Below are positions 2,574 through 47,200 of a DNA stretch of 64,000 nucleotides, one piece after another (positions within the stretch are counted from its first letter, which is position 1; every line of letters starts with the position of its first letter). The translations under genes were made by a program, and so were the position numbers. The DNA comes from Chrysemys picta bellii. Its lineage: Eukaryota. The stretch covers positions 84,258,001-84,322,000 of the forward strand of contig NC_088797.1 in assembly GCF_011386835.1 (NCBI RefSeq), written 5' to 3'. Below the pieces are notes generated by a model. It saw nothing but the letters and a program-made list of their open reading frames with translations. It was not told the DNA's origin and searched no databases.

Positions 2574-2599
2574 TATTGCATTGCTGATAACATGCACTG

Positions 2600-5275
2600 C
2601 AACAGGGCCTTTTGGCTTTGCATTGCCTCTGCGTCTCCTTGTCTTTCTCCATACTGTCTTTGGCCATGGCAATGTTTTCTCTAGCACCTGCCATGCTATC
2701 CTTTGCCACTGCAATGATCTGCCTGGAAAGCTCCTGATCAGTTTCCCTCCCTGTCTTCAGTTATTGCTTCCACCTCTCCACTTTTTTTTTCTTTTTTTGA
2801 CTCTAACGATGTCTGCAAACATTTAATCACAAGTTTTCCCATTTTCTCCCTCTCACATTTGTCAGCTGCTCAGCCTTACTCCTCATTATCTGGCCAGTGC
2901 AGTGCCATAGCTATGGGGTTATTAAAAAAAAAAAAAAAGGCAAGCAGTTATTTGTTTATATTCTAGGAAGGCTGTGATAAGCATTCTTTTTTCATGCCTT
3001 TCTGGCTTTTCCATTCTGAGATTCCTCCCAGATTTGGGGGAATCTCAGAGACAGTAAGTGATGTGTGCACTGGGATTTTTGTCTGTGCTGTACATGCTGT
3101 GGGGTTTGCCATTGCGACTTGAAAGCTGGGGTGGGAATTATCTTCATGATCTGGGGATGGCATTGGGAATTATGTTCCCAGTCTGGCTTTGCTTTGCCTT
3201 GGAGGTGCTTATATGGTATAGGAGGGGTTATCAGGGGAATCTGGGGGTGAGCTTAATCGTAATCTCTACATCTCCTGTAGGCTGTCCTGACTCTGGATGA
3301 TGATACATTGAGATGTGTGACTAGCTGTCTGTGACTGGCCATATTCAAAAAGGGCATACCAGCAAGATACACTGTGAAATGATTCACCAAGATGGTTGAT
3401 CCTCTTCCCAACCTCCTCGCCCTCCCCCACCACCAGAAGTGGAAAGGAGTCATGAACTATACTGGAGAGAAAGGCTGTGCGACTATTCCTCATAATCTCC
3501 TAATAAAAAACAAGCAATTTCTTAGCCTTAAATTTTGCTTTATCTCCCCCGCAGACATGTTGAAAGTGCAGAGAAAAATAGATAGGGTCCTGCAATGATT
3601 ACTTGAAGCGTTCACTGATACCAGTCTGTAAGCACGCATGTTACAGAGCATTTACAGAAGAGCTGTACTTTTTGTGGCTTTGCAGGCATGCAATGTCCAT
3701 GTCTACTCATGTAAAATGAGAACACCAACCAAACTTATTTTCCTGTAACCACTTTCTGAATAAACTTTACATTTCACACAAAAATAATGTTTTCCTTATT
3801 TGAAACTCTTCTGGGAGCGGGTGGGGTAGAGACTGCAGTTGTGTCATCTTGCTGACCGCCATCTTGCGGTGGTGAACGTATTTTATTTTTGGTTGTGTAT
3901 GGTTTTGGGGGAGGGGGGCTCATCCACCAGGCACAACAGCTGAGGGAAGGGGGGAGGAAATAGATACATGTGCACATGCCTTTCTCAGCATGGGTCTGAG
4001 AATAGTTGGTAGTTGGGGCTTTAGCATGAGACGAAACCAGTTGTCCAGCTGGAGCAGCCATCACTTTGGAAAGGGGTACCAGTGGGGGAGGAGGAGAGGT
4101 GGGAGAAGGGACAGCATGGGCCAATGGAAGGAGGGAGGGAGGGACATTGGGCTTAGAAAGGCTTTGAGCTGGCGTTCACCTGCAATGGCTGCAGCCATGG
4201 GGCACCCAGAACAGAAGCTAGCATGACAGTATAGCATAATAATAATATTAATTAATTAATAAAACTTAAATAGTAAAATCATTAAAAAAATTAAAATGTA
4301 CATGTCAAGGTTCCCTCCATAGGATCAGCCTCCTCCGTCCTGGTTTGGGTTGCTTGCTGGGAATCAAAGTTGGTTGCTGCAGGGCAGGAATCAGTCTTCA
4401 GCCTGGCTAGCAGCAGAGTCCTGAGTCCCAACAGATCAGGGTTTCCAGGGAGATCTCTTCACTGGCCTCCTTGTGCTCATGAATCTTGCTGGTCATCCTT
4501 GAGGAGGAGGGGTGTGTGGAGTGAGATTGCAGCCAGCAGCTTTCACACGCTGCCTGGGGTAGGTGGTCCTGTAGTTTGATAAAATCCTGTCCAGCTCCTC
4601 AAAAAATTGACAGGTTACATGTCCCCTGCTAGATGTTTTCCTGCTGTCTCTCATTTTAATATAGGTGCTTCTGAGCAATTTTCTTTTTATCCAGCACCAT
4701 TTGGCATCTCAGTCATGGCCCCTAGCAGACATCGGCCTATCAATAACTACAAAAAGGTCTTTACTGTAGTGGCTGGCCACAAAGGCTTCCTGCCCCAACA
4801 ATTCTCCCCAGAAGGCAATGAGACCCAGAGTCTCGGTGAGGCTTCAAGCAGCTGCTCAAACCACATTATAAGGCTTCTGAAGTATTGCAGGTATTGTGAT
4901 TAAACAGGAATCCAGGAGCAAATAGACAAAATCTGACTATTCACCATCTTATAAATGGGGGAGAGGATAGCCGGGGATAATTTGGCTCCAGAGCAGGAGT
5001 GGAGGCACAGGTGAACCGACAAGTCAGTAACAGTCACCCGCAAAGCAGTGTAGGATAGCCAGTGGAAGACTGCCAAAGTAGTTCGCAGCAACATCGTGTG
5101 CACACAAACAACAGTCGCTTTGAAACAAAGGTTTGCACTTGAAACTGGACTTCAGAGTTTATGATAAATGCACAGTTAGTACACTACAATGAGTTAGGCT
5201 GTGTATATGAAAGCATTTTCAAAGTGGATTAATTTGAAAAGTTCCAATTAAACCAACCTTGTAGACAAGCCCTAT
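2600..5275 (-). mobile_element. Decayed PIF/Harbinger-related element with Myb/SANT-like ORF remnant; left boundary uncertain
   Basis: Harbinger-type terminus TGTAGACAAGCCCTA near 5260-5275 and a Myb/SANT remnant at 4560-4855. No second TIR was found. Confidence 0.5.
4560..4855 (-). pseudogene. Myb/SANT-like DNA-binding domain remnant (Harbinger accessory ORF)
   Basis: Minus-strand translation A*SLTETLGLIAFWGE...ARGHD*DAKWCWIKRKLLRSTYIKMRDSRKTSSRGHVTCQFFEELDRILS fits the Myb_DNA-bind_4/MADF pattern, with two in-frame stops. Confidence 0.75.
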
Positions 5276-5372
5276 GTCACCATGACCGCTTCCTTTCAAA
5301 GTGTAAGGGTATATTTTCCATCATTCTCAATCTTTCATCTACTGTTGATATCAGCTACATACTTTTTGAGAC

Positions 5373-5653
5373 TAGAGCTGGGCAAAATGTTTTTTAGAAA
5401 CATTTTTTTCTACAAAAATTGGCTTTAAACTCCAAATGGAAATTTGAAACTTTAAAATTCTCCAAGTTTGTGGATGAAATACCAGAAAATCAAAAAAGTT
5501 TTCTTGAAAAATGTTGGCTTTCCTGTTTCAAAAAATCTGAAAGAGTTACTGAAAATTTTTCAAATACTAGATATTTTGGGGGAGAAGGATTCAATTTTCT
5601 ACTGAAAAACTGGAATAAATTGTGCAAAATTTGGCATTTTTTTGGCCAGCTCA
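5373..5653. mobile_element. Old non-autonomous DNA transposon (MITE-like)
   Basis: Inverted ends TAGAGCTGGGCAAAA / TTTTGGCCAGCTCA around an AT-rich interior. No clear TSD. Confidence 0.45.
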
Positions 5654-6334
5654 CCTTGACACCACTTGGGCTTCTCGGTCTCGGTCCTTTCCTGAGTCAT
5701 CATCTGCCTTGCTATCTGATCCCTTGGCATTATATTCATTATTTCCTCCCCTCTTTTGGTACTCCCCAGGGCTTTTCCCTTGTTGTCCACTTTCCCACTG
5801 ATGACATCATCTGCTCCTCTAAACTTCCAATACCTTTATACTGATACTTTTCTCCTCTGACCTCTCCCACTTAGTCCATGTTCACGGTTTCTTATCTCTC
5901 TCTGATAGCTTCTCATAAATATGGTGCCATTTTCTTTCCCACTAAACATAGCAAAAACAACTCAGCATTCCCCTGCTCTCCCCACTACAGCTTCCACCAT
6001 TGCTACCCTGTAGAGGAGCTGCATCAATGGTAGACCAAAGTTGAAGAACTGCTAAAAATTCTCACAATTCTCAATGACTATGTCTTTTAATTTCTTTCTT
6101 TACAGGTATACATGTTATTGGTAATAAACACTATTGAGAGTTCTGCTTCTGTTGGCATCTTCTCTTTGAAATTAACTGTAATCCCAAAAGCTTTTATTTT
6201 GGTAGTTGTAATGTTCTGTTAAAAACTCAGCTCTGAATCCATAAGAACATCATTGTCAAATGGAGCTTCTTAAATACATTACAGCAAATAAGATAAAATA
6301 TTTTTTGCCCAAGTTACCAAAGTTACCATATTAA

Positions 6335-6680
6335 CCAATGGCGACTTCACAAAGGAAGAGACATCAAGGACAGGAAAGGTATCCACAACATTTACTGAAC
6401 TTAACATATGGAAATCAATGATATCCAGCATCAGAACAAAACTGAGGATTTTCAGCTCAGAGATAGCTGTATGTTAGCACTGAGACTATGAGAGCTGGAG
6501 ATCTACCAAAACATTTAGAGAGAAAACCAGACACCTTCAAAAATAAGTGCCTACAAAAGATTCTATGCATTGGTTGGAAAACCTTCATCACCAACAAAGA
6601 GATCCAAGAAATAACCAACCAGCAGCTCATTTCCACCAGAATCAGAAGGAAGCACTGGGGCATGTGTTTTGGATGCCAAC
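6335..6680 (+). mobile_element. RTE-clade LINE ORF fragment
   Basis: Frameshifted translation NGDFTKEETSRTGKVSTTFTELNIWKS...TKLRIFSS...FKNKCLQKILCIGWKTFITNKEIQ resembles the post-RT region of RTE elements. Confidence 0.65.
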
Positions 6681-7439
6681 ACTGTAGTGTTAGAATCAGC
6701 TACCCATCAGAATTACCTATCTTGCTGTTACAGAGCATGTTCAAGCAATCTGAAGTCCCAACAGTGTCAGGTTTAGATCATGTTTTGCAACCAGAGAAAG
6801 GTTGCAGCTAGGGTGGAGAAGATCATGCACTACAATTAATCCACCCAGTTTAGCTACGCACATCGAACCCAAAACACTATCAATCACTGGAGCCTTGTCC
6901 AGAAAATGTTTAACCCACACCCCACACATGTAACCCATATGCTTATATTGCAATTGTGTTTTGTTTTTTTCATAAGTCCAAAGAGACAGAAGAATTGGGA
7001 AGGAGAAATTGATTTCAGTTAGGATACTATGGCCCAGATCTTCAAAGGTCTTTAGGCTCCTAGCTTCCATGGAAGTTCGGGGGGGGGGGGGCGGGGGGGA
7101 TTTAGGGGTAGCTAAAGTTAACCTGTGTGTGTGTGTGGGGGGGCGGAATCAGTTCATTCTAACGGAGGAATATCCCATCCCTCAGAATAAACTACCCTAG
7201 GAGAAAGTTGGGAGTAGCTACTTAGGGAAGCAAAAACTGATTTACCGAGTCCAGCCAGCAATTTATTATTTAAATGTGAGTTTTGCCAGAGGGAAAACAC
7301 ATAGAAATTGCTCTTCCTGCAGCAAACAGCGTGGTTCTAAACCGCAGTAACTTTCCCCAGTTGTCATTTGCCCGACAAACAGCAAAGCACCGTGTGCTAC
7401 TCACCTCCCTCCACGGCAGCCAGCTCTCGATGGCCCCCT

Positions 7440-7805
7440 GACACCTCAGTACTCCACACCCCGCGCGCGCCTCCTACCGCCCCCACGCCGAGACCCGCCG
7501 CCGGGCAAGGAAAGCCCTCCCTCGCCCTGCCCGGGTTGGCTGTCTGGGCTGAGCGCCTCCAGCCCCTCCCGCGGGCTGCCCGGGAATGTCAGCGCGGTGA
7601 CCCCTCGACCGCCGCCGGACTCTGACCTTGCACCGGGGAAGGCACCATGGCTTCCAGGCTGCTGCTCCGCGTCCTCCAGCGCGCCCTGCCCGGCAGCGGG
7701 CGGGCCGCAACCCCCGCCAGAGCCATGAGCGCCGGGGGTGCGTACAGCCCGGGGGGCGTACGGGGCAGGCAGGACAGGTGCATAGGGCTGAGAGGAGGCG
7801 GGGGC
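7440..7805 (+). promoter_or_regulatory. CpG island / promoter and first exon region of the COX5B-like gene
   Basis: Abrupt GC- and CpG-rich segment in a CpG-poor background, containing the GCACCATGG Kozak start at 7647. Confidence 0.8.
7647..7737 (+). CDS. COX5B: COX5B-family (cytochrome c oxidase subunit 5B, likely COX5B2-type paralog) coding exon 1, mitochondrial presequence
   Basis: MASRLLLRVLQRALPGSGRAATPARAMSAG+g is Arg-rich and acid-free and resembles the COX5B MASRLL start. Kozak context is good; phase-1 donor GTGCGT at 7738. Confidence 0.85.
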
Positions 7806-7806
7806 T

Positions 7807-8258
7807 TAGGTGCATGGGGCGTGTGAGGGCTGGTAGGGGTGTGTAGGGGGCGGAGGATAGGTGCATGGGGCGTGTGAGGGCTGGTAGGGGTGTGTAGGGG
7901 GCGGAGGATAGGTGCATGGGGCGTGTGAGGGCTGGTAGGGGTGTGTAGGGGGCGGAGGGTAGGTGCATGGGGCGTGTGAGGGCTGGTAGGGGTGTGTAGG
8001 GGGCGGAGGGTAGGTGCATGGGGCGTGTGAGGGCTGGTAGGGGTGTGTAGGGGGCGGAGGATAGGTGCATGGGGCGTGTGAGGGCTGGTAGGGGTGTGTA
8101 GGGGGCGGAGGATAGGTGCATGGGGCGTGTGAGGGCTGGTAGGGGTGTGTAGGGGGCGGAGGATAGGTGCATGGGGCGTGTGAGGGCTGGTAGGGGTGTG
8201 TAGGGGGCGGAGGGTAGGTGCATGGGGTGTGTGAGGGCTGGTAGGGGTGCTTAGGGGC
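7807..8258 (+). repeat. 51-bp G-rich minisatellite, ~8.8 copies, in COX5B-like intron 1
   Basis: GTGCAT recurs at 7810, 7861, 7912, 7963, 8014, 8065, 8116, 8167 and 8218. Unit TAGGTGCATGGGGCGTGTGAGGGCTGGTAGGGGTGTGTAGGGGGCGGAGG(A/G); degenerate copies continue to ~8340. Confidence 0.97.
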
Positions 8259-9029
8259 AGGCAGAATAAGTACATAGGGCATGTAAGGGCTGGTAGGGTG
8301 GGCAATATACGGGCGTGTGAGGGCTGGTAGTGGGCCAGGCGGAACGGGGAGTGAGTGAGTGCGGGTGATCAAGCGATGAGAAGCTGGGGGCAAGGGATAA
8401 GGTGTCAGCCCCTTAGGGGTGTGTAGAGGATGAACAATCCTGGCAAAAGAGAGAAATTCCTCCACCACAGTTCTAGCCAGTTAGTTGGGGCGCTGAATCT
8501 ATGTTGGGACTAAAATAAGTCTTTTCATCCAGTGCTTTAGGAATGTGGCTTTATGTTTATTGCCATTCAGCCAAGCCAAGGGGGCCCGAAAGCCCTTCAT
8601 ACACACAAGTGGCATTAAGCTCTATTCCTTGTGTCTGGAGTGCCTCAGTGGCCGAGTGAGAGCTCATTGTGCTGCCATCAAAGGACAAGGGTTCAAATCC
8701 AGTTATTGATTTATAAATTGTCACACAGATGATTTAAGCTGGAAAATGGGCTAAAACTATAAAGCAAACAAATCAAAACAAAAATCAACAGATATGCTCT
8801 CTAGGGACATGTCTTCATTTGGGATTTCGCACTGGTGTAGTTGGGGCAAAAATCTATTCACATGGGATTTTCACAGGGGGATATTGGGAGGAATTTAAAG
8901 GTTTGAAGTTTCACAAATGACAGAGGGAGAAGTGTTTTAGTGGTTAATTTGTAACTGTTGTTTTCAATTTTTGTAAAAGAACAATACTTCAGTGTAGGAG
9001 GATAGTTCATTAGCTGATGGTGTGGAGCA

Positions 9030-23374: not shown

Positions 23375-24668
23375 CTGAAGTGACCAAAATATGTGATTAT
23401 TAGTCAAATTCACAAAATATCAGGACACTGAATATGTAAATACTGTATGTAGAAAGAGACAACACATTGATACTGAGTTATACAAAACCACAAATGTCGT
23501 TGTTCTATACGCATTTTTATTTTTTTCACCAAGTTTACTTTTTTATGTTTTTATCTCTAAAGATACGTTTTCTCCCACATTGGATACCAGTTAACATCCT
23601 ACTACTAAAATAATTCTAACACTAGTAAATTCTAATCAGGGTATTTGCACTCTGCCTATATAAATACCTCTTGCACTTTCAGTTGAATACATTATTATTG
23701 ACCGGAACTTCTTGTTCTGAACTACTTGACTGTACACAGTAACATTGTTTAACTACCACCACATTTCAGTGGTGGATGTACAGTGACTCAAAAGATTTTG
23801 GGATCTTCCTGAAAGTTAGGAAATTTCTTGTGTGCATTTACTATAAAATCCTAGCTTCTAACAAAAATCCTAAAGCCTTCCCAGTAAAGTGTACATCTAC
23901 TACTCTGAACACTAGAACTGGGTGTCTTTTTCTGTTACTTTATCCAATATAAGCAGGATTTGTAGCATCACATGAGAAGTCTACGAAATATATCTGTATT
24001 ACCACTTGTTAACATCTACTGTTCTCAGCTATAGAACACAGAGTACAGGGATAGGCACCTCTTCTTCACCAAGCTTTTTATTCAAAAGACACAAAATGAA
24101 CCAAGAGACCTAGTGGAAAGTTCTACATTACAGCTATTGTTTTTAATACTATAAAACTACTGCCCCCATTTATTAATGGCATGAATTAGTATTTGTGGCT
24201 GTATAGGGAGAGATTTGAAAGAAAAGAAAAAGAAAATGAATGGCACTGGGATAAGGAGGAAATTCCACACAGCAGGGTTCTTGTGATACCAAACAACACA
24301 AATGGAAAAGACCGTTACCTTTTCGTAACTGGTGTTCTTCGAGATGTGTTGCTCATGTCTATTCCACAATAGGTGTGCATGCTCGCCACGTGCACCGGTG
24401 CCGGACGTTTTTCCCCAGCAGTACCCGTAGGGAGGGAGCGCCACCCGCAACCCCTGGAGTGGCGCCTGGCTGGCACGGTATAAGGGGAGCTGCGCCCTCC
24501 CACCACCCTTAGTTCCTTCTTGCCAGACAACTCCGGCAGAGAGGACGGAGGGCAGGATGTGGAATAGACATGAGCAACACATCTCGAAGAACACCAGTTA
24601 TGAAAAGGTAACGGTCTTTTCTTCTTTGAGTGATTGCTCATGTGTATTCCACAATGGGCGATTCCAAG

Positions 24669-25700
24669 CTATACCTGCTGGAGGTGGGTAGGAGTTCCCA
24701 AGTTCTCAAGACGGAGTACCGCCCTGCTGAACCCGGCATCATCCCTGGTTTGGGAGACTATCGCATAGTGCGAGGTGAACGTGTGAACCGAAGACCACGT
24801 GGCGGCCATACAAATGACCTGTATAGGGACGTGGGCCACGAAGGCAGCCGACGAAGCCTGCGCTCGAGTCGAGTGCACCCTCACAATGGGCAGTGGGAGG
24901 ACACCTGTCAGCTCATAACAGGAATGGATGCACGAAGTGATCCAGTTGGAAAGCCGCTGAGTGGAAATCGGTTGGCCTCTCGAGCGCTCAGCTGAGGCGA
25001 AAAACAGTTGCAGGGACTTTCTGAACGGCTTGGTCCACTCGAGGTAGAAAGCCTGAGCCCGCCTCACATCAAGCATGTGGAGACGGCGCTCCTCACTAGT
25101 CACGTGAGACTTGGGGCAGAGGACTGGAAGAAAAAAGTGTCCTGACCCATGTGGTAGGCGGAGATCACCTTCGGGAGGAACTCGGGGTATGGGCGGAGCT
25201 GGAGCTTGTCCTTATGAAAGACCGTATACGGCGGCTCGGAGGTCAGGGCCCTGAGCTCCGAGACCTGCCTGGCCAATGTGATAGCAACCAGGAAAGCCAC
25301 CTTCCACGAGAGGTGAGACCAGGAACACGTGGCTAACAGTTCAAATGGGGCCCCTGTAAGACGAGCTAGCACTAGATTCAGATCCCATTGTGGGACCAGA
25401 GGCTTAGAGTATGGGTAAAGCCAGTCCAAACCCTTAAGGAACCGGCAGTCATAGCACGGGAGAACACAGAGTGTCATTGCACCGGGGGATGGAAAGCCGA
25501 TATGGCCACCAGGTGCACCTTGACTGATGAGGGCGCCAGGCCCCGGGCCCTCAGGTGGAGGAGGTAATCAAGGATAAGCTGGATTGGGGCGGCCGTCGGG
25601 GACACACCTTGGTCTGCCGCCCACCTAGAAAACCGAGACCACTTTGCCATGTAGGCGCGCAGTCTACTTTCGAGGAAGACGCGCTGAACTTGTTCTGAGC
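24669..25700 (-). pseudogene. DIRS tyrosine recombinase, disrupted
   Basis: Pieces PQWDLNLVLARL...KVAFLVAITLARQVSELRAL and IVRVHSTRAQASS...ATWSSVHTFTSHY carry the HxxR, W and Y motifs. Frameshifts are present and the first catalytic Arg appears as Gln. Confidence 0.85.
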
Positions 25701-26483
25701 ATGTCCTTTCCTCGCCACCTAGCTACTGAGCAGCCACACTGAGGTGAAGAGCTGCCAGGTTGGGGTGGAGGAGGCGGCCCTGGTCCTGAGAGAGCAGGTC
25801 CGGGCGGAGTGGCAATGGCCACGGCGGAGTCACCGCCAGCCCGAGAGGGTCCCGTACCAGTGCTGCCTGGGCCACGCTGGGGCAATGAGGAGGACCCTGG
25901 CTTTGTCTGTCTTTATTTTCTCCAGGACCCTGCTCATCAGAGGGAATGGGGAAAAAGGCGTAGAGAAGCTGGCCTGACCAGGATAGAATAAAGGCATCAG
26001 AGATAGCGCCCTTCCCTAGGCCCGCCCCGGAGCAGAACCGGGGGCATCGTCGGTTCTGCCGGGTCGCAAATAGGTCTACCTGGGGAGTTCCCCACCTTCA
26101 GAAGAGCTAGTGGGCCACTTCCGGGTGTAGAGACCACTTGTGCTGAGAGGAAAAGTCTCTGCTCAAGTGATCCGCCCTCACGTTCTGGGCGCCTGGCAGG
26201 AGAAAGGCTTTTAGGTGGATGTCGTGGGCTATACAGAAGTCCCACAGACTGAGGGCTTCGTGGCAGAGGATTGGGCCCCACCTTGCCGGTTGATATAGAA
26301 CATTGAGGCCATATTGTCCGTGAGGATCCTGACTACCTTGCCCTTCAGATGTGAGCGGAAGGCCATACATGACGGTCACACTGCCCTGAGTTGACATTTA
26401 TATGAAGGGTCAGGTCTTGCAAAAACCACAGGCCTTGGGTCTGAAAATTCCCCATATGTAGCCCCCAGCCCAGGTCCGGTGCA

Positions 26484-27368
26484 TCAGACACCAGCTCCAA
26501 CGACAGGGCCCTGTCCCTGAACAGGACCCCTTGGAGCATGTTGCTTGGGGCGGACCACCACCGCAGGGAGGTGATCACCAAGTTCGGCATGGTGAGGACC
26601 TTGTCTATTCTGTCCGTGGTCTGGGAGAACTTCGAGGCCAGCCAGAGCTGGAGGGGCCTCATCCTGAGTCTGGCGTGGCGGACCACATACGTGAACGCCG
26701 ACATGTGACCTAGCAGCTGCAGGCAAGCCCCGGCTGTCGTCACTGGGAACCTTGCAATTGAGTTGATGAGCCCTTTCAGGGTCTCGAACCTGTCTGGGGG
26801 GGAGAGAGGCCCTGGCCGACGTTGCGTCCAGGAGCACCCTGATAAACTCTATGCGTTGGACCAGGACTAACATGGACTTGGTGTTGTTTACCAACAGGCC
26901 CAGGGCAGTGCATGTGGACAGGAGGAGTGCCACATGATCCCTCACCTGTGATCGGGAGTTGCCCTTGACCAGCCAGTCGTCCAGACACGGGAATATCTGG
27001 ACCCCCCGGTGCCTGAGGTAGGCCTCTATTACCAACATGCACTTTGTAAAGACCCTGGGGGCAGTGGACAGACCAAATGGGAGGATCGTGAATTGGTAGT
27101 GATTCTGTCCCACCACGAAACGGAGGAAGCGCCTGTGCCCTTTGAATAGGTGGATGTGGAAGTACGCATCCTGTAGATCGAGGGCAGCGTACCAGTCCCT
27201 AGGATCCAGGGAGGGGATGATGGAGGCCAGGGAAACCATGCGGAACTTGAGTTTCACCATGTACTGGTTCAGGCCTCGCAGATCCATGATGGGCCTGAGC
27301 CCCCATTTGGCCTTCAAGATAAGGAAATACCAGGAGTAATACCCCTTGCCCAGGAACTCCTTGGGCAC
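26484..27368 (-). pseudogene. DIRS reverse transcriptase, disrupted
   Basis: LRPIMDLRGLN...WYAALDLQDAYFHI...YQFTILPFGLSTAPRVFTK...FPCLDDWL. YLDD has become CLDD and the frame shifts near 26790. Confidence 0.9.
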
Positions 27369-28726
27369 CGCCTATATCGCTCCTAGTTCCAGGAGCCGTC
27401 CGACCTCCTGCTCGAGCAGAGCCTCGTGCAATGGGTCCCCCAAGAGGGACAGGGGCGAGGGTGGGGTGGGGTGTTGGGCAGGGAGGAGGTAAACTGAAGG
27501 GTATAACCTCAGGAGATGGTGTCGAGGACCCATTGGTCCAAGGTGAGCCGCGACCATTCTGGGAGGAAAGCACACAACCGACTGGAAAAAGGGAGCTTTA
27601 TTGGGGGTGGATCCCTGCTGAGAACTAGCGAGGTACCCCTGAGCATCCAGTCAAAAACGCCTTTTACCCGCCTGCTTGCCCTTAGAGAACCCAGGCTGGG
27701 GGGCAGGCCAAGACTGCCTCTGCAGGCGTTTTCTATAGTCCCGCTGCTTCTTAGGGGCGGCCTCGTACTTTGGAGGGCAGGAGCCTGCTGCAGCTTGCAC
27801 TTGGGTTTTGCCAGAGCAGGGACATAGAGGCCCAAGGTCTGGAGGGTCATGCGAGCGTCTTTCATGCCGTGCAGACTTGTGTCCGTTTCCTCAGCAAACA
27901 GAGCTTTCCCGTCGAAAGGGAGATCCTGCATTGATGACTGCGCTTTGCTGGATAGCCCAGAGAGCAGGAGCTTGAACGACTTGCAGATCTTGCACTTTTC
28001 GCTGATATGGGTTTCTTCCAAGCAGCGCAGACAGTCCACATGCAGGTCACTCCTTGGCATAGAACGCCTACAAGAGCTGCACGACTTAAATCTCGGGGCG
28101 CAGGGCACTAACTAACTAAACAAACAATGAACGAACAGTTCTGGGGACAAGCTGCAGCAAAGCTGGAGCTGAGCAGTTCTGACGCACCTTCACTGGCAGC
28201 AAGAAAGAACTGAGGGTCAGGAGAGCGCGCAGCTCCCCTTATACCATGCCAGGCAGGTGCCACCCCAGGGGTCATGGGGGGCGCTCCCCCCCCCCCCCCC
28301 CAACGGGTACTGCTAGGGGAAAAACTTCCGGCATCAGTGCACGTGGCGAGCATGCACACCTATTGTGGAATACACATGAGCAATCACTCGAAGAAGAACT
28401 TGTATAATGTCGAGAAGATATTTTAAGGATGTATAGTCCAAAAAAGGAAATGGGCTTTTTTTCAGTTTATAAAACACCTGGATAAACATTTTAAAATATT
28501 TTCATTTCCTTTCTGCCTGCATGACTTCATAAGGCACCACACAAAAGTAAAAGTAATTCAGAATATATAACTTGTTTTGACTACACAACCTTGTCATCAC
28601 ACCCATGCACTAAAATTTATTTGGCCACTTGTTGACTAATGCATTGCATATTATGATAAGGAAAATTCCTACTGGTTTGTGTGTCTAGATATTTATCTAG
28701 GCACTATTTAAACAAAAAACAAAAAC

Positions 28727-28757: not shown

Positions 28758-29232
28758 CAAAAAAACCTCACATCTGGGTCACCTGCCAGTAAATGGAGCT
28801 CTGGGATGGTTTTTTTGAGTAGATGAAACTATCATTCAAACAAGAGATGTCTGAAACCACCAAAGACCCTTAAACCTAAATTCTTTGAACACAAAAGTTC
28901 ATGTGTTAACAAACATTTTTTTTTGTTAACTTTTTCTCCTTAAAAATTTAATGCATATGGTTCTCTCTCAGTTCTCTGCAAGGTTTGTCCAAGAGACTTT
29001 AGAGAGATCAGATATGAAACATTAAGTGTGAGGATGAATCTGTGGAAATTAAAGAGATTCCATTTACTGTTAGCAAAATTATGCTACCTCATCTTTAGGG
29101 AAACTGGAAAGCTTAATTTCAACATAGGAATGTGGGGGCAGGAAGTGCTGGAGAGGCAATACCATCAAGTGTTTTGCTTTTGCATTTTAAATGTATACCA
29201 GTTTAATATACTCTAACTAAACTAGTACTTAC

Positions 29233-29416
29233 CTTCTCCAGTTCTTTCCAATCATAATTTGTGTTCCCAATCACCATCGCCTGCAGCTCACTGGGCTGGA
29301 AGAGCTGAAGAACTTTACCACCACACACCTTATGAAAGCCTGTGTGGAATGCATTAAATAAGGAAGCCACTGATTTACTGAAGATGTAATCCACATAGGC
29401 ATCTACAAATTCTTGC
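29233..29416 (-). CDS. HERC4: HERC4 coding exon (184 nt)
   Basis: TACAG acceptor; g+QEFVDAYVDYIFSKSVASLFNAFHTGFHKVCGGKVLQLFQPSELQAMVIGNTNYDWKELEK; GTAAGT donor. Confidence 0.96.
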
Positions 29417-30644
29417 CTGTAGAGTGAAGACAAAAGCAAACACATTTTAAAAACTGAAGATATTTAAGTACCATTCTTCCATGAATAAATCAATGGTCAA
29501 CCTAGCACAAAATACGGATTTTAAGATACTGTATTCTGCCTACGGTCTTTGCTGTGGCCACAATGAAGATCCTTTGACCATGAGCAGAGCATTAATTCAA
29601 TTCTTCCCAAAACTGAGAGAGTATGGAGTGGACAAACAACAACATTAAATAATGCATTTCAGACAACATGAGCCTTTTAATTATTTGTACCCTCCATAAT
29701 GAATTGGCTCTTCCGGAAACTTGCACTGCCTCTTGTAATGCTGATTCTCAGTGTAGTGGTCTGAAACTCATTATTCAAGTCACTGTTCCTTTAATAAAAA
29801 GGGTTATTTTCAGTTTTAGGGAGTGATTGTGTATGCTCCGTGTTGGAAGACAAGTTCGTAACTCCCATGGATATCTCATGTTCTGTATAGTGTCTTGGAT
29901 CACACAGAAAGGGTTAATTATGGTTAGGGAAGGACTATGAGAACTACTCCTTGTTACTAAAGAGCATGAACATATCAGGCAAGATACTTGAAATGTTTGC
30001 ACTCAAATACAGATGGCAAAAATCCAATAATTTACTAGTTTACTTTTGACTGTGAATATTTTTACACCAGTTTAGTCAGCACTAAGTGGTTCAATCATGC
30101 TGCCGTTATTTCTGTTAGCAGATTACCAGTACCCTACCAATACATTTTCTTCAGGGAAATCCATAGTATTTTTGTGTATTATCAGGGTCATCATTTATCT
30201 CAGAAGGATCATTTGAATGCACCTTGCAAACAGCCTGGCATTTGTTTGGGTGGTTGCCACGCAAATCTTTACAACGCTACCTTTTGCCTAGGTAATGTTG
30301 CTGCAATATTCACAATATTATTAAGACTGTAATTGAGATTGCTATACAAAGGAAAATAAAAGGTGCTAAATGATAGAGGACTGTAAAAACTCTCAAAACA
30401 CAGTCAGTGTCAGACGATAATCAGTACTAACAAATTATTGATAAAGCACACCTTCCCAGTACACTTCAGGCAGTACCTGAATCTCTTGGCATGCTTCCAA
30501 TTCATGTAAATATACAACAATTAAGCAGGCAAACCAAAAAAGTGAATAGACATCTTCATGAAACAACAGGTACTTCCTTAACAATGAAATCCCACAAATA
30601 CTGGCAGCACCATAGTGATCCTTTACTATCAGCCAAGAATTAAA

Positions 30645-39957: not shown

Positions 39958-41432
39958 CTGCAAAACATTACATTTTGTCTTCATCTTAATGCATTGAAAA
40001 ATTAACATATGTTGAGTATGTGTTCTCAGTATTTTGTCAGTTCTGTATCTTTCTACAGTTATCTTCTTTGAATTTCTCACTTAGATGACTAGCATTTAGA
40101 AGTGCAAAGTTAGGAAACCCTCCACTGATTCATGTTTCATTTAAGTTGAAATGCACCACAAAGCTTGGTGAACATTTTCTTGTTTTCCCTTCATTTCTGA
40201 GAGGCCTTAATTCCTTCCAATTGTCTACTCTAGAAGCAAGGTGAGAGGGTTCTTATTTTGGAGTTGGAAAGGAGCAAGAGGGCTCACAGAATAGGAAAAG
40301 AGGTAGGGTACTGAGAGAAGTAGAATGATAGCAGCCTGATCCTTCGTCTCAGTACCTGAAATATATGTTTCAATACTGTTTATGGAGTAAGTGAAAAGTC
40401 TATAGAAGAAGAAAATATTTAGTAATAAAAGGCAAGTTCTACAAAAAGTCTCTCATTGACTTCAATGGGAGCTCAGCATTTCAAAATCCATTCAAGCTTA
40501 CTTACGAAACTAAATATAGATTTAGGAGCTTAAACTTTAGGTCCTCTTTTTAAACTTTGCAATGGGATTTATATTGTTGAATTCTGATTCCTCATTTTGA
40601 TATGACCTTATATGCCATTACATTTCTTAAAATATTTTCTTTAACTCTTTTTCATTCCTAGCAATCTGGCTTTAGACCTAGGCATAACACAAAAGACGGC
40701 ACATATTCCTTTGATTGATGGAAGATGGCAGAGCTGCAACTCAAAAATATATCTTAATCTCCCTTAATTGCCTTGCACATGTCGAACAGAGGTGGATGGG
40801 AACATGGGACACTACAGTTATGAGCCATTGAGGAAAATGTATAATAGCCCATCAAGGACCTTTGGATCCTCCTCAAAAGAGTATGGTTTGCCAACTGATC
40901 AAAATGTTGTGTTTTATTTTTGTTTAATGAAGATGGGAACAATATACACACATTAAAAATAAATGGTTTTCTCTGAATTTTCTGGTCTCAAATACTCCAA
41001 AAATTGATATTAACTATATATCCTCAAATGAAAAAAAAGTTCAAATTCATAACATGTACTTGTTTTTGAAATATGCAAATCAATATGTCCTCATTAGAAA
41101 CTGAATAAATTGCCTAAAACAGATTATGTTCAAAGTAAGATGAGTTGTATTTACAACACACACATCTGAACCTAAAAATTTCAAAATTTGGGGACATTAA
41201 GTTCCAAACAGGAAAGAATTCTTAATCCCAAACCTAAGCATCTGAAACTATATAAAACAGTAGCGTAAATCCAAACTCAACTTTTAAGCCTAACTAGTAT
41301 AGTTAGAGCTTTTTGTCTATTTATTGAGATATTATTTATTCAATTTCTTGTACATTACAGGAAACTACATCGTGCATTTAATAAGAAAGATGATACACTG
41401 GTTATCCTGTCATTCAATTTATATCGGCTCAC

Positions 41433-41599
41433 CTGCCAACATCAGGCATTAACTCTTTTAAGTCATCTAGAGAAGGCTTCTTATTCAACAGCTTCTTGTA
41501 CAAAGCCAAGGGGAACTGAAGGTCCACAATTGTAAAATTATATATTGCGAGCCCACAGACAACACCAATCAAATGGAACAAGTCACTGTCTTCAAAGGT
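41433..41599 (-). CDS. HERC4: HERC4 coding exon (167 nt)
   Basis: TTCATAG acceptor; [55 protein letters not shown]+ag; GTGAGC donor. Confidence 0.96.
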
Positions 41600-42048
41600 C
41601 TATGAAGAACAGAAAATACAAGAGTTAAGAGTTAAAACATTTGTCAACTGAAAAAAAAGTTCAGATTTTTAATAGGTTTATATTCTATTTCATTTACATT
41701 TCCTATAAACAAAAATATAATCTTATTTCACAGACACTGTTAAAACAGGTACGTTTTTAACCAGTTGAGTAAGACTGAAATCCAAGGAGAAAAAACGGTT
41801 ACCTAACCTTTCGTAACTGTTCTTCAAGATGTGTTGCTCAGGTCCATTCCATTCTAGGTGTGTGCACGCCCATGTGCACAGTTGTCGGGACTTTTGCCTT
41901 AGCGGTATCCGTAAGGCTGGCTGTGGCACCTCCAGGAGTGCTGCGTTCATGCATTGGTATATCAGGCGCCACAGGCTCTACGCCCTCTCAGTGCCTTCTT
42001 GTCAGCAACTCCGAGAGGGGCAAGTAATGGAATGGACATGAGCGACAC

Positions 42049-43140
42049 TGACCTGTCTTTCCATATTCTTTATGGAAATATGCTTATGATATGAATGACA
42101 TAACTGAGATAAACTTCATGCAAGATGGCTCATGTGAGCTATCACTAGAAAGTTTATGATTAACTGAATGCGATTATCCTATTTGTATGCATATATCATT
42201 TCTGTATCTGAAATTAGGAATAGTGACTGTATCTGTATTTCAACTATGTTACTTTGGGTGACGGCCACTGCCAACACTTCAGATACAACAATAGAAAAGC
42301 CAGACAGGGCGGATGGCCCATCAACAGGGACAATGGACTGTAAAAGAGCTTAGTCTTCCTGTGAAGAATGGCTACAAAGGTACAGAGTCAGGTGGTCTTG
42401 TCACCTGATACTAAAACATTATCTGGGACTTCTTGTAACTTTCCACTGTAAGGGACGGGGAGTCAAACTAGAAAACGAAAGACTCCCGCCTTATGCAAAT
42501 CCTATTTAAGGGTGGGGAGTGAGGTAATCCTGGTCGTCAATTCTCCCCTGCTACCCCACCCAAGATGATTGCTGGGAACAACTAAGACCGACCGGGGGAA
42601 AGAACTTGGTCCAGGCTGGAAGGGCGTCTGGTCTGTGAAGAAGTTTATTAGAACCACATTTAGGGTGAGAACTCACATGTAACCAGTGTATTAAGCTTAG
42701 TTTGCGTGCTCTGTTTTATTTTCTTAGTAAACTGCCTTGTTCTGTCTGCTACCTCCTTAACTACTTAAAATACACCTGTTATAGTTAATAAATTTATTTC
42801 TGGTTTATAATACAACCCACTGTATATGATTTCTAACTGGGGGGGGCGGGAAGGGAGGGGCGAGAAATTGTGCATACCATCTTCCACATTGAGAGAAGAG
42901 GTGAATATAATAGATCTTTGGGTCTGTACTCCAGGGGAGGTGGACATCTGAGTGCTGGAGCAAGTCCCGCACGCTAAGTCTTCCCAGAGCTGGTGGGTGG
43001 GTGTGGGTGTGTTTTTTACAGGAGATTTTAAGAGCCTGGCTCAGCAAGACAGGTTAAAGGGGGCCCACACTGGCAGAACACGTTAACTCTGTGGTATCTC
43101 AGCACATCAGGTGACTTCCCAAGGGGTCCAACCCATTACA
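42049..43140 (+). mobile_element. Solo LTR (1092 bp) inserted in the ICR of DIRS #4
   Basis: Begins TGACC and ends ATTACA, with AATAAA at ~42787. The ICR sequence GAGCGACAC|ACACGTCTCAAAGAAC resumes after it (ACAC duplicated, plus an extra GT). Confidence 0.8.
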
Positions 43141-44727
43141 GTACACGTCTCAAAGAACAGTTATGAAAAGTAGGTAGCTGTTTTTTCTTCAAGTGTTTGC
43201 TCATGTCAATTCCATTCTAGATGGCTCACAAACAGTATTCCTGGAGGTGGGCTCAGAGTTCACAGTTGAGCGGCTTGTAATACCACTCTACCGAAGCCAG
43301 CGTCATCTCGGGCTTGCTGGGTAAGCACATAGTGAGATGTGAACATATGGATGGATGACCACGTGGCAACCCTGCAGATATCAGAAATTGGCACACGGGC
43401 CAGGAAGGCCGCCACCGAGGCTTGTGCTTTAGTTGAGTGGACTGTTACGATCGCTGGTGGAGGTACCTTTGCCTGATCATAGCAAAATTGGAAGCAGGTT
43501 GTGATCCAAGATAAAATTCTCTGGGTGGACACTGGATGACCTTTTATCCTATCTGCCACCGCAACGAACAACTACGTCGACTCGCAAAATGGCTTGGTCC
43601 TCTCAATGTAGAAGGCTAGCGCTCTCCTGACATCTACGGAGCTCAACCTACATTCCTTCTCGGACGTATGAGGCTTTAGGCAGAAAACTGGCAAGAATAT
43701 GTCCTGGCTTGTGTGAAATTGGAAACCACCTTCGGCAGGAAAGCCGGATGTGGCTGCAACTGGACCTTGTCCTTGAAGAACACCGTATACAGCGTCTCCA
43801 ATGTAAATGCCCTAATCTCGGAGATCCTTCGGGCAGAAGTTATCGCCACCAGGAATGACATCTTCCAGGAGGGCAGAAGAAGGGAACAGAATGCCAAGGG
43901 CTTGATGGGAGTTTTCATGTGCCACGCAAGTACCAGATTCAGGTCCCACGGGAGGACTGGGACCCAGACTTGGGGGTAGAACCATTCCAGACCTTTTAAG
44001 TACCGGACCGTCATGCAACCCTGGAGCTTGAGATGCATAAGGCAGTCCAGAATCAGCTGCAGCGAGGCCTGCTCAGGCTAACCACTTGGGCCGAGGCCCA
44101 GCACGTGAATCGTTTCCATTTGATGAGGTAGGTTGCTCTAGTGGAGGGCTTTCTATTCCTCAGTAGGACCTGTTGGACTCGGGTCGAACATTCCCACTCC
44201 TCAGTAGTTAACCATGGAGCAACCAAGCTGTGAGGTGGAGTGCTGCCAGATTTGGGTGCAGGAACTGGCCATGATTCTGTGACAGGAGATCCGGCCAGTG
44301 GGGCAGTGGCATTGGGATCATCACTGACAGGTCCATGAGCGTGCTGAGCACTTTTGCTGGCGAGGCCAAGCCAGGGCTATTAGGATAATCTTGGCCTTGT
44401 CCTGCTTGATCTTCATGAGGACTTTGTGAAGCAGTGACACCAGTGGGAAAGCTTACATCAGAGCCCCCAACCAAGGAAATAGAAAGGTGTCCAACAGGAA
44501 GCCCCTGTTGACCCCCCAAAATGAGCAGAACCGGTGGCACTTCCTGTTCTGGCGAGTCACGAACAAGTCCACCTGGGAAGATACCCACTTTCGGAAGGTC
44601 TGCTCAACCACATTGAGGTGGAGAAACCATTTGTGGCGAGACGAGAAGGTTCTGCTGAGGCGATCTGCCAACATGTTCCTGGTTCTGGGGAGGTGCGTTG
44701 CCATGATATGAATGGCATGCTGCACGC

Positions 44728-44844
44728 AAAAAAAAAAAAAAAAAGATGAGAAATTCTGTCTGTGAGCCCAACAGCCATTTGGGAAAAACCAAGTTAAAGC
44801 CTTAGTAATAGTAATAATAACTAACATTGCATGCATGAAAAAAA
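44728..44844 (-). other. Local duplicate of a HERC4 intron/exon junction (source 51244-51342) inserted in DIRS #4
   Basis: Direct alignment to 51244-51342 shows 5 substitutions, one 4-bp deletion and one 3-bp insertion over ~100 bp, preceded by an A17 run. Confidence 0.93.
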
Positions 44845-44904
44845 TCTGAGGGTTTCCTGGCAGAGGGCAGATGGCCTGGCTCTGCCCTGGTTGTTGATAT
44901 AAAA

Positions 44905-45908
44905 CAGGGGTAGGCAACCTTTCAGAAGCGGTGTGCCGAGTCTTCATTTATTTACTTTAATTTAAGGTTTCGCGTGCCGGTAATACATTTTAACGTTTTT
45001 TAGAAGGTCTCTCTCTATAAGTCTATATATTATATAACTAAACTATTGTTGTATGTAAAGTAAACAAGGTTTTCAAAATATTAAAAAAAAAAAAACTTCA
45101 TTTAAAATTAAATTAAAAGGCTGATCTTACGCCACCAGCCTGCTCAGCTCGCTGCCAGCCTGGAATTCTGTTCACCTAGACCGGCAGCGGGCTGAGTGGG
45201 GCCTGACCTCTGAAGCCCCCCACACCCCCAGAAGGGTGGGTGTGGAGGGCTTCAGAGGTCAGGGCAGAGGACTAGGGGTGTGGGGGGGGTGCAGGGCAGA
45301 AGGCTGGGGGTGGGGTGGGTCAGGGCAGAGGGCTGGGGTGTGTGTGGAGGTGCAGTGCAGAAGGCTGAGGGTGGGGTGGGTCAGGGCAGAGGGCTGGGGT
45401 GTGTGTGGAGGTGCAGTGCAGAAGGCTGGGTGTGGGGGAGGTTCAGGGCAGAGGGCTGGGGTGCTCGGCTCGTGGGGGTGCTCCCAGCCCCCTGCCCTCT
45501 GCCCTGAGCGGCTCATGGCAGGGGGCTGGAAGGGATATATCCTGTTCCACCCCCTGCCCCAAGGCCCGTCCCTGCCTCTTCTCTGCCTCCTTTACCCATG
45601 GCCGGCCTTAGCAAGGGGCTACCGCGCGCCGGCTGGAGCTCCGTCCGGGAGAGCCGGGCCGTTGGGCTTTTGCAGAGCAGCGAGCACGGGGCAGGAAAGC
45701 AGGCTGCACCACGGCTGGGGGAAGGAGGGGGGGGGGGAGCTTGGCTGCTGCAGGACAGAGCTTCTACCTCCTGCCCCAGTAGGGGAGAGCAGTGGGTGGG
45801 GGGGGCTGAGTGCAGCTGGGGGTCGGAACCAAGGCAGGCAGCCGTGTACCATTCAAAATTGGCTCCCGTGCCGTGTTTGGCACGTGTGCCGTAGGTTACC
45901 AACCCCTG
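44905..45908. mobile_element. hAT non-autonomous element (1004 bp) nested in DIRS #4
   Basis: TIRs CAGGGGTAGGCAACCT / AGGTTACCAACCCCTG and a perfect 8-bp TSD ATATAAAA (44897-44904, 45909-45916). Internal G-rich tandem repeats lie at ~45260-45460. Confidence 0.92.
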
Positions 45909-46448
45909 ATATAAAACATTGCGGTGGTGTTGTCAGTCAGGACTCGAACCACTTTGCCTTTTAACTGGGACCGAAAAATCTGGCAGGCCAGGCGAACAGC
46001 TCTGAGCTCCCTGACATGTATGTGGAGGTAGCGGTCGACCACTGACCAGCGGCCCTGTGTACTGACCTCGCCCAGGTGGGCTCCCCAGCCTAGGTCCTAG
46101 GCATCGAACACCAGAGTTAGCGACGGGAATGCACAGGGAACTCACTACAACAACGATGCGGGGTCCTGCCATCACGCCAGTGATGCCCAGATGGGGCCCG
46201 ACACGTTTACTACCACGTCCAGGTCATACCTGTTTTACTGGAAACCCGGGAGGTGGGCAGGCACAAGCCCACCCACTTCTAAAGGCCCCTCCCCCAGCCT
46301 AGCAGGAGGGACCACTGGACCCAGGGACCAAATGAATGCGGGGGACAACAAATGAGAAAGCCAGAGAGTGAGGTGAAGGTCATAGGTTTAAAACGAGGGT
46401 ATCAGATAGGGACACCGAGCAGAGAACCTTGTCGTGCCTGATGGGGAT

Positions 46449-47200
46449 TTAGACCAACGCCAACCACACCTGCCGCAGCCAGAGGTGTAGCCAGGCATGA
46501 CGGACCACATAAGTACAAGCAGCCATGTGGCCTAGCAGCCGCAGGCAAGTATAGGCAGTGGTGAGCGGGTGGCCCCTCACATCTGACATGACTCGGAAAC
46601 GGGGCTCTGGAAAGAATGCCCTAGCCTGTGTGGAATCAAGAACCGCCATGATAAACTCTATCCATTGCACTGGTACAAGGGTCGATTTATTTTTGTTCAC
46701 TAACAGGCCCAGGTCGTGGCATGTGGACTGCACCAGATTGAGGCTGCTCTGCACTTGATCCCGTGATCTGCCCTTGATGAGCCAATCGTCGAGATAAAGA
46801 TAGACCTGGATCCCCTGACACCGCAGGTAAGCAGTTACTGGGACCATGCATTTTGTAAAGACCCATGGGACCAAGGAGAGGCCAAAGGGGAGCACTGTGA
46901 ACTGGAAATGGTGCTGGCCCACCATAAAACGGAGGAAATGTCTGCATCCTTGGAAGGTAGAGGTATGGAAATAAACGTCTTTCAAGTCAAGAGTGGCGTA
47001 CCAGTCTCTCGGATCCAGGGAAGGAATGATGGAGGCCAGGAACTCCATGCGAAACTTCAACTTCTTGAGGTACTTGTTGAGTCGTCGCAGGTCCAGAATC
47101 GGTCACAGGCTCCATTTTGCCTTCGGGATCAAGAAATAGTGGGAGGAAAAACCTTTCCCCCTCATCTCCAGAGGGACCTCTTCCATCACCCCCAGTTGTA
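46449..47200 (-). pseudogene. DIRS #4 reverse transcriptase remnant
   Basis: WYATLDLKDVYFH...FQFTVLPFGLSLVPWVFTK...QVYLYLDDWLIKG. Confidence 0.88.

What the first reader, a model, noticed from the sequence alone, without database searches (positions are those of the whole stretch)
44728..44844. A piece of HERC4's own exon/intron junction was copied into a DIRS element 6.4 kb away, and its splice acceptor was then inactivated
Seen: 44745-44844 matches 51244-51342 (38 nt exon plus 61 nt upstream intron, same orientation) with 5 substitutions and 2 small indels. It replaces about 10 bp of DIRS RNase H sequence, has no TSD, and both junctions fall in A-runs. The acceptor CCCCAG|ATG has become CCCAA|ATG. 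The A17 run is on the wrong strand for a retro-poly(A) tail, and the intron is retained. Inference: a locally templated insertion made during break repair (polymerase-theta/MMEJ or template switch, from DNA or nascent pre-mRNA). The decoy acceptor, lying downstream in the same pre-mRNA, may have been selected against. The copy currently reads AHRQNFSS in frame with DIRS RH/MT (ORF 44453-44947).
Basis: partly seen in the sequence, partly recalled or inferred. Interest (0 to 1): 0.75.

Follow-up and report, generated by a model that had tools for sequence, protein, structure and literature searches.

The report
Nearby gene piece patched into transposon
A 100-base copy of a nearby HERC4 intron/exon junction sits as a single-copy patch inside an old DIRS jumping gene in a later intron of the same gene; it is most likely the scar of a repaired DNA break, a known kind of mutation with no sign of function.

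Summary
Window 44745-44844 is a same-orientation copy of 51244-51342 (61 nt of intron 3' end plus the first 38 nt of a HECT/HERC4 exon). It differs by 5 substitutions, a 4-bp deletion and a 3-bp insertion, and its acceptor AG now reads AA. It interrupts the RNase H region of a decayed minus-strand DIRS element (41789-50067, with inverted terminal repeats). Contigs of public runs show the DIRS flanks at multi-copy depth and the patch at single-copy depth. Paralogous DIRS copies run straight through the site with about 13 nt where the patch and the A17 run now sit, so about 9 bp were lost and there is no target-site duplication. A contig from another species label bridges the left junction exactly, so this is neither a dispersed repeat nor an assembly error. 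The best reading is a templated "filler" patch laid down during break repair or template switching, primed at short A/T microhomologies. It is closest to class 2 templated sequence insertions. Polymerase theta in particular fits poorly (100 nt in one tract, from 6.4 kb away). Whether the template was DNA or nascent RNA is open. Selection against the decoy acceptor is unsupported: the chance of a random hit is 0.16, and a CAG lies 19 nt downstream. This is a tidy example of a known mutation type, of low interest.

The parts
44745..44844 (-). The patch: a copy of 61 nt of HERC4 intron 3' end plus the first 38 nt of the exon, in gene orientation; the acceptor AG now reads AA
   Evidence: single-copy depth
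44728..44744 (.). A17 (T17 on the gene strand) at the left junction. Up to 4 A come from the DIRS (paralog reads CAAAAG) and up to 6 from the source (AAAATA); the rest are slippage or untemplated additions
   Evidence: (table 5c)
51244..51342 (-). Template (source) segment: exon start 51244-51281 and intron 3' end 51282-51342, flanked by T5 and TATTTTT on the gene strand
51114..51281 (-). Source exon of the HECT E3 gene (HERC4), CAG|ATGGCT acceptor, AAG|GTATAG donor; encodes MAVDQAHRQNFSS...KKPLK
   Evidence: orthologous ORFs all diverge just upstream of ...Q|MAVDQ
50800..50943 (-). Next exon (VIFVGEEAVDAGGVRKEFF...FSDK; approximate bounds), lying between the source exon and the DIRS-bearing intron
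   Evidence: aligned with L002
41432..41599 (-). Following HECT exon (approximate bounds), about 200 bp beyond the DIRS end
   Evidence: (Pfam HECT, E = 2.6e-11)
41789..50067 (-). DIRS-A, the decayed DIRS1-like retrotransposon that hosts the patch. Inverted terminal repeats at 41834-42000 and 49900-50067; RT at 46449-47273; RNase H/MT-like at 46009-45909 and 44904-44447; tyrosine-recombinase-like region at 43260-44038
44905..45908 (+). Nested non-autonomous hAT-like element, TIRs CAGGGGTAGGCAACC.../...GGTTACCAACCCCTG, 8-bp TSD ATATAAAA at 44897-44904 and 45909-45916; it starts 61 bp from the patch
   Evidence: depth of 1e5-3e6 and loose ends at 44905

Best explanation
An old DIRS retrotransposon in a HERC4 intron suffered a break (or a stalled fork) in the germline, within its RNase H region. 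One 3' end paired at a short A/T microhomology with the HERC4 intron/exon junction 6.4 kb away on the same chromosome (or the sister chromatid). About 100-110 nt were copied in one tract. The new end then re-paired with the other broken end at a second short microhomology and was sealed, with the loss of about 9 bp of DIRS sequence. The result is a single-copy 'filler' patch with no TSD. Afterwards both copies drifted neutrally: the A/T run at one junction grew to 17, and the patch picked up a few substitutions (one of them AG>AA) and two small indels. The patch has no demonstrated function. Shown here: the copy, its single-copy status, the uninterrupted ancestral DIRS site, the microdeletion, the junction sequences, and that the patch is younger than the DIRS. 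Inferred: the break, the microhomology priming, the polymerase, and DNA as the template.
For: The match is real and unique in the window. In one search the DIRS flanks have summed contig depths of about 500-9000 and the hAT-like element 1e5-3e6, while the patch bins 44742-44843 have 7-20 (X1), 17-56 (X5) and 0-10 (X7). Exact-match single-copy contigs in the same runs have depths of about 10-60, so the patch equals about one such contig. Paralogous DIRS contigs jump from 44665-44689 to 44845-44848. One of them (table 5c) shows ...GCTGCACACAAAAGTCCCATAG before 44845. The window's own second DIRS reads ACAGAAGTCCCACAGACTGAGGG at the same place, encoding the expected L-W-D-F-C. So the DIRS was continuous here and lost about 9 bp. 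On the gene strand the source segment is bounded by TTTTT and TATTTTT, and the DIRS site reads ...CAGAT / ...CTTTTG, giving 1-5 nt microhomology at each junction. Patch-to-source K2P is 0.055 (0.087 in the neutral intron part), against 0.173 between the two DIRS-A ITRs, so the patch is younger than its host. An organism C contig (X7, record 23) matches 44644-44804 with 0 mismatches and 1 gap, and so bridges the left junction. The features match class 2 templated sequence insertions: no TSD, no poly(A), microdeletion, microhomology (PMC5110952).
Against: No contig shown bridges the right junction, and in X7 the bridging contig's last 178 letters do not lie on the window beyond 44804, which is unexplained. 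The A17 run needs at least 6-10 extra A beyond what both parents can supply, so a further step (slippage or untemplated addition) has to be assumed. The break itself is not observable. The ITR-based age assumes the ITRs were identical at insertion. The ancestral site rests on one paralog contig plus one diverged copy in the window.
Confidence: 0.7

Rival explanations
1. Same patch repair, but templated by nascent HERC4 pre-mRNA rather than DNA. The plus-strand 3' end ...CAAAA at the break pairs with the U-run (UAUUUUU) just after the copied exon piece in the unspliced transcript and is extended by a reverse-transcribing polymerase. Stuttering on the U-run could give the long A-run.
For: The break site and the template lie in the same transcription unit, in the same orientation. 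The intron is retained, as in nascent RNA. The polarity works: the A-ending plus-strand end sits at the junction that carries A17. Class 2 TSIPs are argued to derive from RNA (PMC5110952).
Against: Nothing distinguishes RNA from DNA here. Both orientations are possible with either template. There are no editing-type A>G differences. DNA in cis or on the sister chromatid is the simpler template.
Confidence: 0.12
2. The patch was first fixed with an intact, strong decoy acceptor. The AG>AA change (and perhaps the T>A in the pyrimidine/branch region) was then favoured by selection because the decoy disturbed HERC4 splicing.
For: The last roughly 27 nt of the source intron are nearly identical between the turtle and a distant vertebrate contig (L001), so a constrained, probably strong 3' splice signal was imported. 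AG>AA arose in the patch. The patch lies in sense orientation inside a HERC4 intron.
Against: With 5 substitutions in 61 nt, P(at least one hits the AG) = 0.16. The polarity of the other changes is mixed: L001 and L002 disagree. A CAG lies 19 nt downstream of the mutated site, so inactivation is not shown. The 8-kb DIRS must hold many cryptic sites anyway. No RNA data were obtained: X9 has depth 0 on the patch.
Confidence: 0.12
3. Assembly artefact: reads from the exon junction were mis-joined into the DIRS copy.
For: The A17 run and the repetitive flanks are hard to assemble. No listed contig spans both junctions.
Against: The copy differs from the source at 5 sites and 2 indels, so it is not the same reads used twice. 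A contig from a run of another species label matches 44644-44804 exactly across the left junction. Runs under three species labels from several studies hold the stretch.
Confidence: 0.03
4. Retro- or transposon-mediated capture. Either a LINE-type retro-insertion of a HERC4 (anti)sense RNA fragment, or capture by the DIRS reverse transcriptase or a DNA transposon before this copy was made.
For: A-rich sequence at both junctions is reminiscent of L1-type target sites. The host is a retroelement, and a hAT-like element starts 61 bp away.
Against: There is no TSD; instead there is a deletion of about 9 bp. The long A-run precedes the plus-sense reading and follows as T17 on the gene strand, so it is not a 3' poly(A). 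The A7 on the other side is 5/7 templated. The patch is single-copy while the DIRS family is multi-copy, so it was not carried by transposition. The whole patch is accounted for by source sequence, with no transposon termini.
Confidence: 0.03

Closest known systems
Class 2 templated sequence insertion polymorphisms (TSIPs; Onozawa and Aplan, PMC5110952)
   Same: A short patch copied from a non-adjacent genomic place. No TSD, no poly(A), microdeletion at the recipient site, microhomology and possible untemplated letters at the junctions. Heritable, so made in the germline or early embryo.
   Different: Here the template is in cis, 6.4 kb away in the same gene and the same orientation. TSIP donors are described as distant, often on other chromosomes, and RNA-derived. 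This one is old and seen under at least two species labels, not a polymorphism.
Polymerase theta templated insertions (TINS) in theta-mediated end joining (PMC7165422)
   Same: Synthesis primed at short microhomology, then re-annealing to the other end; AT-rich junctions.
   Different: TINS are 3-30 bp, identical to DNA immediately flanking the break, and single tracts are rarely over 10 bp. Here about 100 nt were copied in one tract from 6.4 kb away.
MMBIR / fork-stalling template-switch insertions (MMB-TI; PMC8421209)
   Same: A polymerase switches template at microhomology and copies tens to hundreds of nt from a nearby template before returning.
   Different: The operational MMB-TI signature is an inverted copy of a template within 100 bp. 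Here the copy is direct and 6.4 kb away, and there is no further rearrangement.
Filler DNA at plant and animal end-joining junctions (own knowledge, not checked in a paper here)
   Same: Ectopic genomic sequence of tens to hundreds of bp inserted at a deletion junction.
   Different: It is mostly described at experimental or transposon-excision breaks. No excision footprint or other cause of the break is visible here.

Membership tests
Class 2 templated sequence insertion (break-repair patch) | Inserted sequence is templated from elsewhere in the genome and the donor is retained | tested here: met
   Source 51244-51342 is intact in the same window; 95% identity
Class 2 templated sequence insertion (break-repair patch) | No target-site duplication; microdeletion at the recipient site | tested here: met
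   The paralog contig and DIRS-B show a continuous site; about 9 bp (GTCCCATAG on +) are missing
Class 2 templated sequence insertion (break-repair patch) | Microhomology and/or untemplated letters at the junctions | tested here: met
   1-5 nt A/T (or AG) overlaps are possible at both junctions; surplus A in the A17 run
Class 2 templated sequence insertion (break-repair patch) | RNA origin of the patch | not testable with these tools
   The intron is retained; nothing separates nascent RNA from DNA
Class 1 TSIP / LINE-mediated retro-insertion | TSD of 5 bp or more, 3' poly(A), TTTT/A target | tested here: not met
   Deletion instead of TSD. The A17 lies 5' of the plus-sense reading and appears as T17 on the gene strand. 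The A7 is 5/7 templated
Polymerase theta TINS | 3-30 bp insertion identical to immediately flanking DNA | tested here: not met
   100 nt copied from 6.4 kb away, against the definition in PMC7165422
Dispersed repeat / part of the DIRS family consensus | Many genomic copies | tested here: not met
   Patch depth is 7-56, against 500-9000 for the DIRS flanks and 1e5-3e6 for the hAT-like element
DIRS1-like retrotransposon (host element) | Inverted terminal repeats | tested here: met
   41834-42000 against 49900-50067, inverted, 85% identical, and homologous to the ITRs of the second copy
DIRS1-like retrotransposon (host element) | Reverse transcriptase / RNase H pol | tested here: met
   Pfam RVT_1, E = 1.2e-17; RH region aligned with the second copy
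DIRS1-like retrotransposon (host element) | Tyrosine recombinase instead of an integrase | tested here: inconclusive
   Only a sub-threshold Phage_integrase hit on the second copy (E = 0.035, 14.3 bits against a cut-off of 27.1). The H-S-T-R ... H-Y motif is visible by eye in both copies
HERC4 (gene identity) | HECT exons closest to named HERC4 proteins | tested here: met
   Pfam HECT on two exons. The one HERC-named hit is UniRef 'Putative E3 ubiquitin-protein ligase HERC4', 91% identity.

The most novel reading that the evidence does not exclude
The patch is a fossil of transcript-templated break repair in a vertebrate germline. A break in an intron of an actively transcribed gene was bridged by reverse-transcribing the gene's own nascent, unspliced pre-mRNA from 6.4 kb upstream, and the A17 run marks the primed U-run junction.
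Probability: 0.1. Interest if true: 0.6.

Novelty: new member of a known kind. Interest (0 to 1): 0.25.

Why it matters
This is a clean natural example in which donor, recipient, uninterrupted ancestral site and both junctions of a templated repair patch can all be read within 7 kb. It shows that such patches can carry a complete, conserved splice acceptor into a downstream intron of the same gene. A genome-wide count of such cis patches, with donor strand and transcription status, could help decide between DNA and RNA templates. As a single case it does not change what is known about break repair or splicing.

Tried and rejected
(1) I tried to fetch orthologous patch loci from other species. 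A word search with the patch-spanning ORF (region 30-80) found nothing. Exact look-ups of four ORFs on or beside the patch were not on record. The patch therefore could not be dated across turtles beyond the three coded species labels.

(2) I tried to polarise the 5 substitutions with orthologous source junctions (L001, L002). Only AG>AA is clearly patch-derived, and CACG>CATG is probably so (CpG decay). For the other sites the two outgroups disagree or do not align.

(3) A PDB sequence search to name the gene gave only E6AP-type HECT hits for one exon and nothing for the source exon.

(4) Pfam on the recombinase ORFs of DIRS-A gave no hit.

(5) Helitron or Pack-type capture is rejected: no TC...CTRR ends, and the whole patch is accounted for by source sequence.

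(6) A link to the hAT-like element 61 bp away was considered. Its TSD is intact and the patch is not at its insertion site, so there is no evidence for a link.

(7) Mammal-like hits P0078-P0084 were deliberately not fetched, because they could include human contigs.

Full report
**Observation**

The two stretches were read and aligned (scripted global alignment). Window 44745-44844 matches 51244-51342 in the same orientation, with 90 of 95 aligned positions identical. The differences are five substitutions, a 4-bp deletion and a 3-bp insertion in the copy, and two extra A at its right edge.

Window self-BLAST gives E = 3e-32 for this pair. Two probes of 22-24 nt, with up to 3 mismatches, each find only these two places, against 0 expected.

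On the minus strand the source reads ...TTTTCCCCAG|ATGGCTGTTGACCAGGCTCACAG... and the copy ...TTTTTCCCAA|ATGGCTGTTGGGCTCACAG.... The A17 run is 44728-44744, and the right junction lies in A7 at 44838-44844.

**The gene**

Minus-strand ORFs at 41432-41581 and 29206-29445 hit Pfam HECT. The 80-aa exon finds many exon-sized ORFs from public contigs. The only hit carrying a HERC name is 'Putative E3 ubiquitin-protein ligase HERC4' (UniRef, beaver), at 91% identity.

The source exon is 51114-51281. Orthologous ORFs from other vertebrates all share MAVDQAHRQN... and diverge directly upstream of a Q (CAG). Two such contigs (L001, L002) carry CAG|ATGGCT.

A further exon (VIFVGEEAVDAGG...FSDK, about 50800-50943) lies between the source exon and the DIRS. 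The patch is therefore in the second intron downstream of its source, not the adjacent one.

**The host element**

- The patch lies in a decayed minus-strand DIRS1-like element, DIRS-A (41789-50067).
- Its inverted terminal repeats are 41834-42000 and 49900-50067.
- Its RT is recognised by Pfam, and it has RNase H and recombinase-like regions.
- A second copy, 65-70% identical, lies at 24305-28398 with its own ITRs.
- The tyrosine recombinase is supported only by a sub-threshold Pfam hit and by the HSTR...HY motif.
- A 1004-bp hAT-like element (44905-45908, 8-bp TSD ATATAAAA) splits the RNase H region and starts 61 bp from the patch.

**Single copy, and the uninterrupted site**

Contigs of four public runs were laid on 44300-45300 at 80% likeness or more. 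The runs carry three coded species labels and come from four studies.

| Region | Summed contig depth |
|---|---|
| DIRS flanks | about 500-9000 (many paralogs, 16-19% different) |
| hAT-like element | 1e5-3e6 |
| Patch bins 44742-44843 | 7-20 (X1), 17-56 (X5), 0-10 (X7), 0 (X9) |

Exact-match single-copy contigs in the same runs have depths of about 10-60, so the patch depth equals about one contig. The patch is therefore neither a dispersed repeat nor part of the DIRS family.

Paralog contigs jump from 44665-44689 to 44845-44848. One of them shows the letters in between, ending ...GAATGGCATGCTGCACACAAAAGTCCCATAG before 44845 (table 5c). The window's own second DIRS reads ACAGAAGTCCCACAGACTGAGGG at the same place and encodes the expected SLWDFC. 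So DIRS-A was continuous here. The patch plus the A-run stands in place of about 13 nt, of which about 9 (GTCCCATAG) are lost. There is no TSD.

A contig from organism C (X7, record 23) matches 44644-44804 with no mismatch and one gap. It bridges the left junction in independent data. Together with the 5 substitutions and 2 indels that separate the copy from the source, this excludes an assembly mis-join.

Two limits remain. No listed contig shows the right junction, and the last 178 letters of that X7 contig do not lie on the window beyond 44804.

**Junctions and mechanism**

On the gene strand the source segment is bounded by TTTTT (5') and TATTTTT (3'). The DIRS site read ...CTCAGAT|CTATGGGAC|TTTTGTG.... 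Each junction therefore offers 1-5 nt of microhomology. At the right junction on the + strand, AAAAAG/ATAGATC would also fit an AG overlap followed by G>A.

The simplest history has four steps:
1. A break or stalled fork occurs in the DIRS.
2. One 3' end pairs at the A/T run next to the exon piece.
3. About 100-110 nt are copied in one tract.
4. The new end re-anneals at the second microhomology and is ligated, with loss of 9 bp.

The A17 run needs 6-10 more A than both parents supply. This calls for later slippage or untemplated addition. The one-letter gap in the organism C contig could reflect length variation in the run, but its place was not listed.

**Comparison with known classes**

- **Class 2 templated sequence insertions** are the closest match: no TSD, no poly(A), microdeletion, microhomology (PMC5110952).
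- **Polymerase theta TINS** are 3-30 bp copied from the immediate flanks, with tracts rarely over 10 bp (PMC7165422). This specific attribution fits poorly.
- **The MMB-TI signature** is an inverted copy from within 100 bp (PMC8421209), which also differs.
- **LINE-type retro-insertion** fails on TSD and poly(A).
- **Transposon capture** fails on copy number and on the absence of termini.

Nascent pre-mRNA as template is polarity-compatible: the plus-strand end ...CAAAA-3' could pair with the transcript's U-run. It is indistinguishable from DNA with these data.

**Age**

Patch-to-source K2P is 0.055 overall and 0.087 in the intron-derived part, where both copies are free to change. The exon-derived part has no substitution. 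That is unremarkable: P = 0.26 if the source exon is constrained.

The two ITRs of DIRS-A differ by K2P 0.173. If they were alike at insertion, the DIRS is about twice as old as the patch. Given slow turtle substitution rates (own knowledge), the patch is probably tens of millions of years old. Its presence under species labels A and C, and probably B, agrees with that, but those species are very close to each other (0-1 mismatch per 200 nt).

**The acceptor**

AG>AA arose in the patch, since all orthologues keep CAG. CACG>CATG is probably CpG decay in the patch. The remaining three differences cannot be polarised, because L001 and L002 disagree or do not align.

The last roughly 27 nt of the intron are nearly identical between the turtle and the distant L001. 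The patch therefore did import a constrained 3' splice signal. Even so:
- with 5 substitutions in 61 nt, the chance that one hits the AG is 0.16;
- a CAG lies 19 nt downstream of the mutated site;
- no RNA evidence was obtained.

Selection against a decoy acceptor is possible but unsupported. The ORF that reads AHRQNFSS in frame with the downstream RNase H piece is an accident of the 4-bp deletion in an element full of frameshifts.

**Verdict**

It is a single-copy, cis-templated repair patch inside an older DIRS element. This is a new instance of a known mutation class, with no evidence of function.

Mammal-like protein hits (P0078-P0084) were not fetched, to avoid handling possibly human contigs.

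Noticed in passing
window 24305-28398 (-): A second, shorter DIRS1-like copy (DIRS-B) in another HERC4 intron, in the same orientation. It has ITRs at 24335-24523 and 28199-28395 (K2P 0.13), a 294-aa RT ORF and a recombinase-like ORF with HSTR...HY. It is 65-70% identical to DIRS-A.
   Followed up: partly
window 44905-45908: A non-autonomous hAT-like element with an 8-bp TSD (ATATAAAA), nested in the DIRS RNase H region. Its first roughly 180 nt belong to an extremely abundant family (summed contig depth 1e5-3e6 in all four runs). Its interior holds GC-rich tandem repeats of about 61-68 bp (45229-45463).
   Followed up: partly
window 44805-44843, run X7 (organism C): The organism C contig that bridges the left junction stops matching the window at 44804, although it has 178 more letters, and X7 depth is 0 at 44810-44843. 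This could be a species-specific indel or insertion in the TAA-rich part of the patch, or a contig or tool artefact.
   Followed up: no
window 7783-8298: A tandem array with a period of about 51 bp (about 10 copies, 90-94% identical), seen in the self-comparison.
   Followed up: no
L001:524-550 vs window 51282-51308: The last roughly 27 nt of the intron before the MAVDQ exon (CTAAGGCTTTTACTTGGTTTTTCCCAG) are almost identical between the turtle and a distant vertebrate contig whose intron is otherwise unalignable. This suggests a strongly constrained branch-point and pyrimidine tract.
   Followed up: partly
I did not examine it.
   Followed up: no
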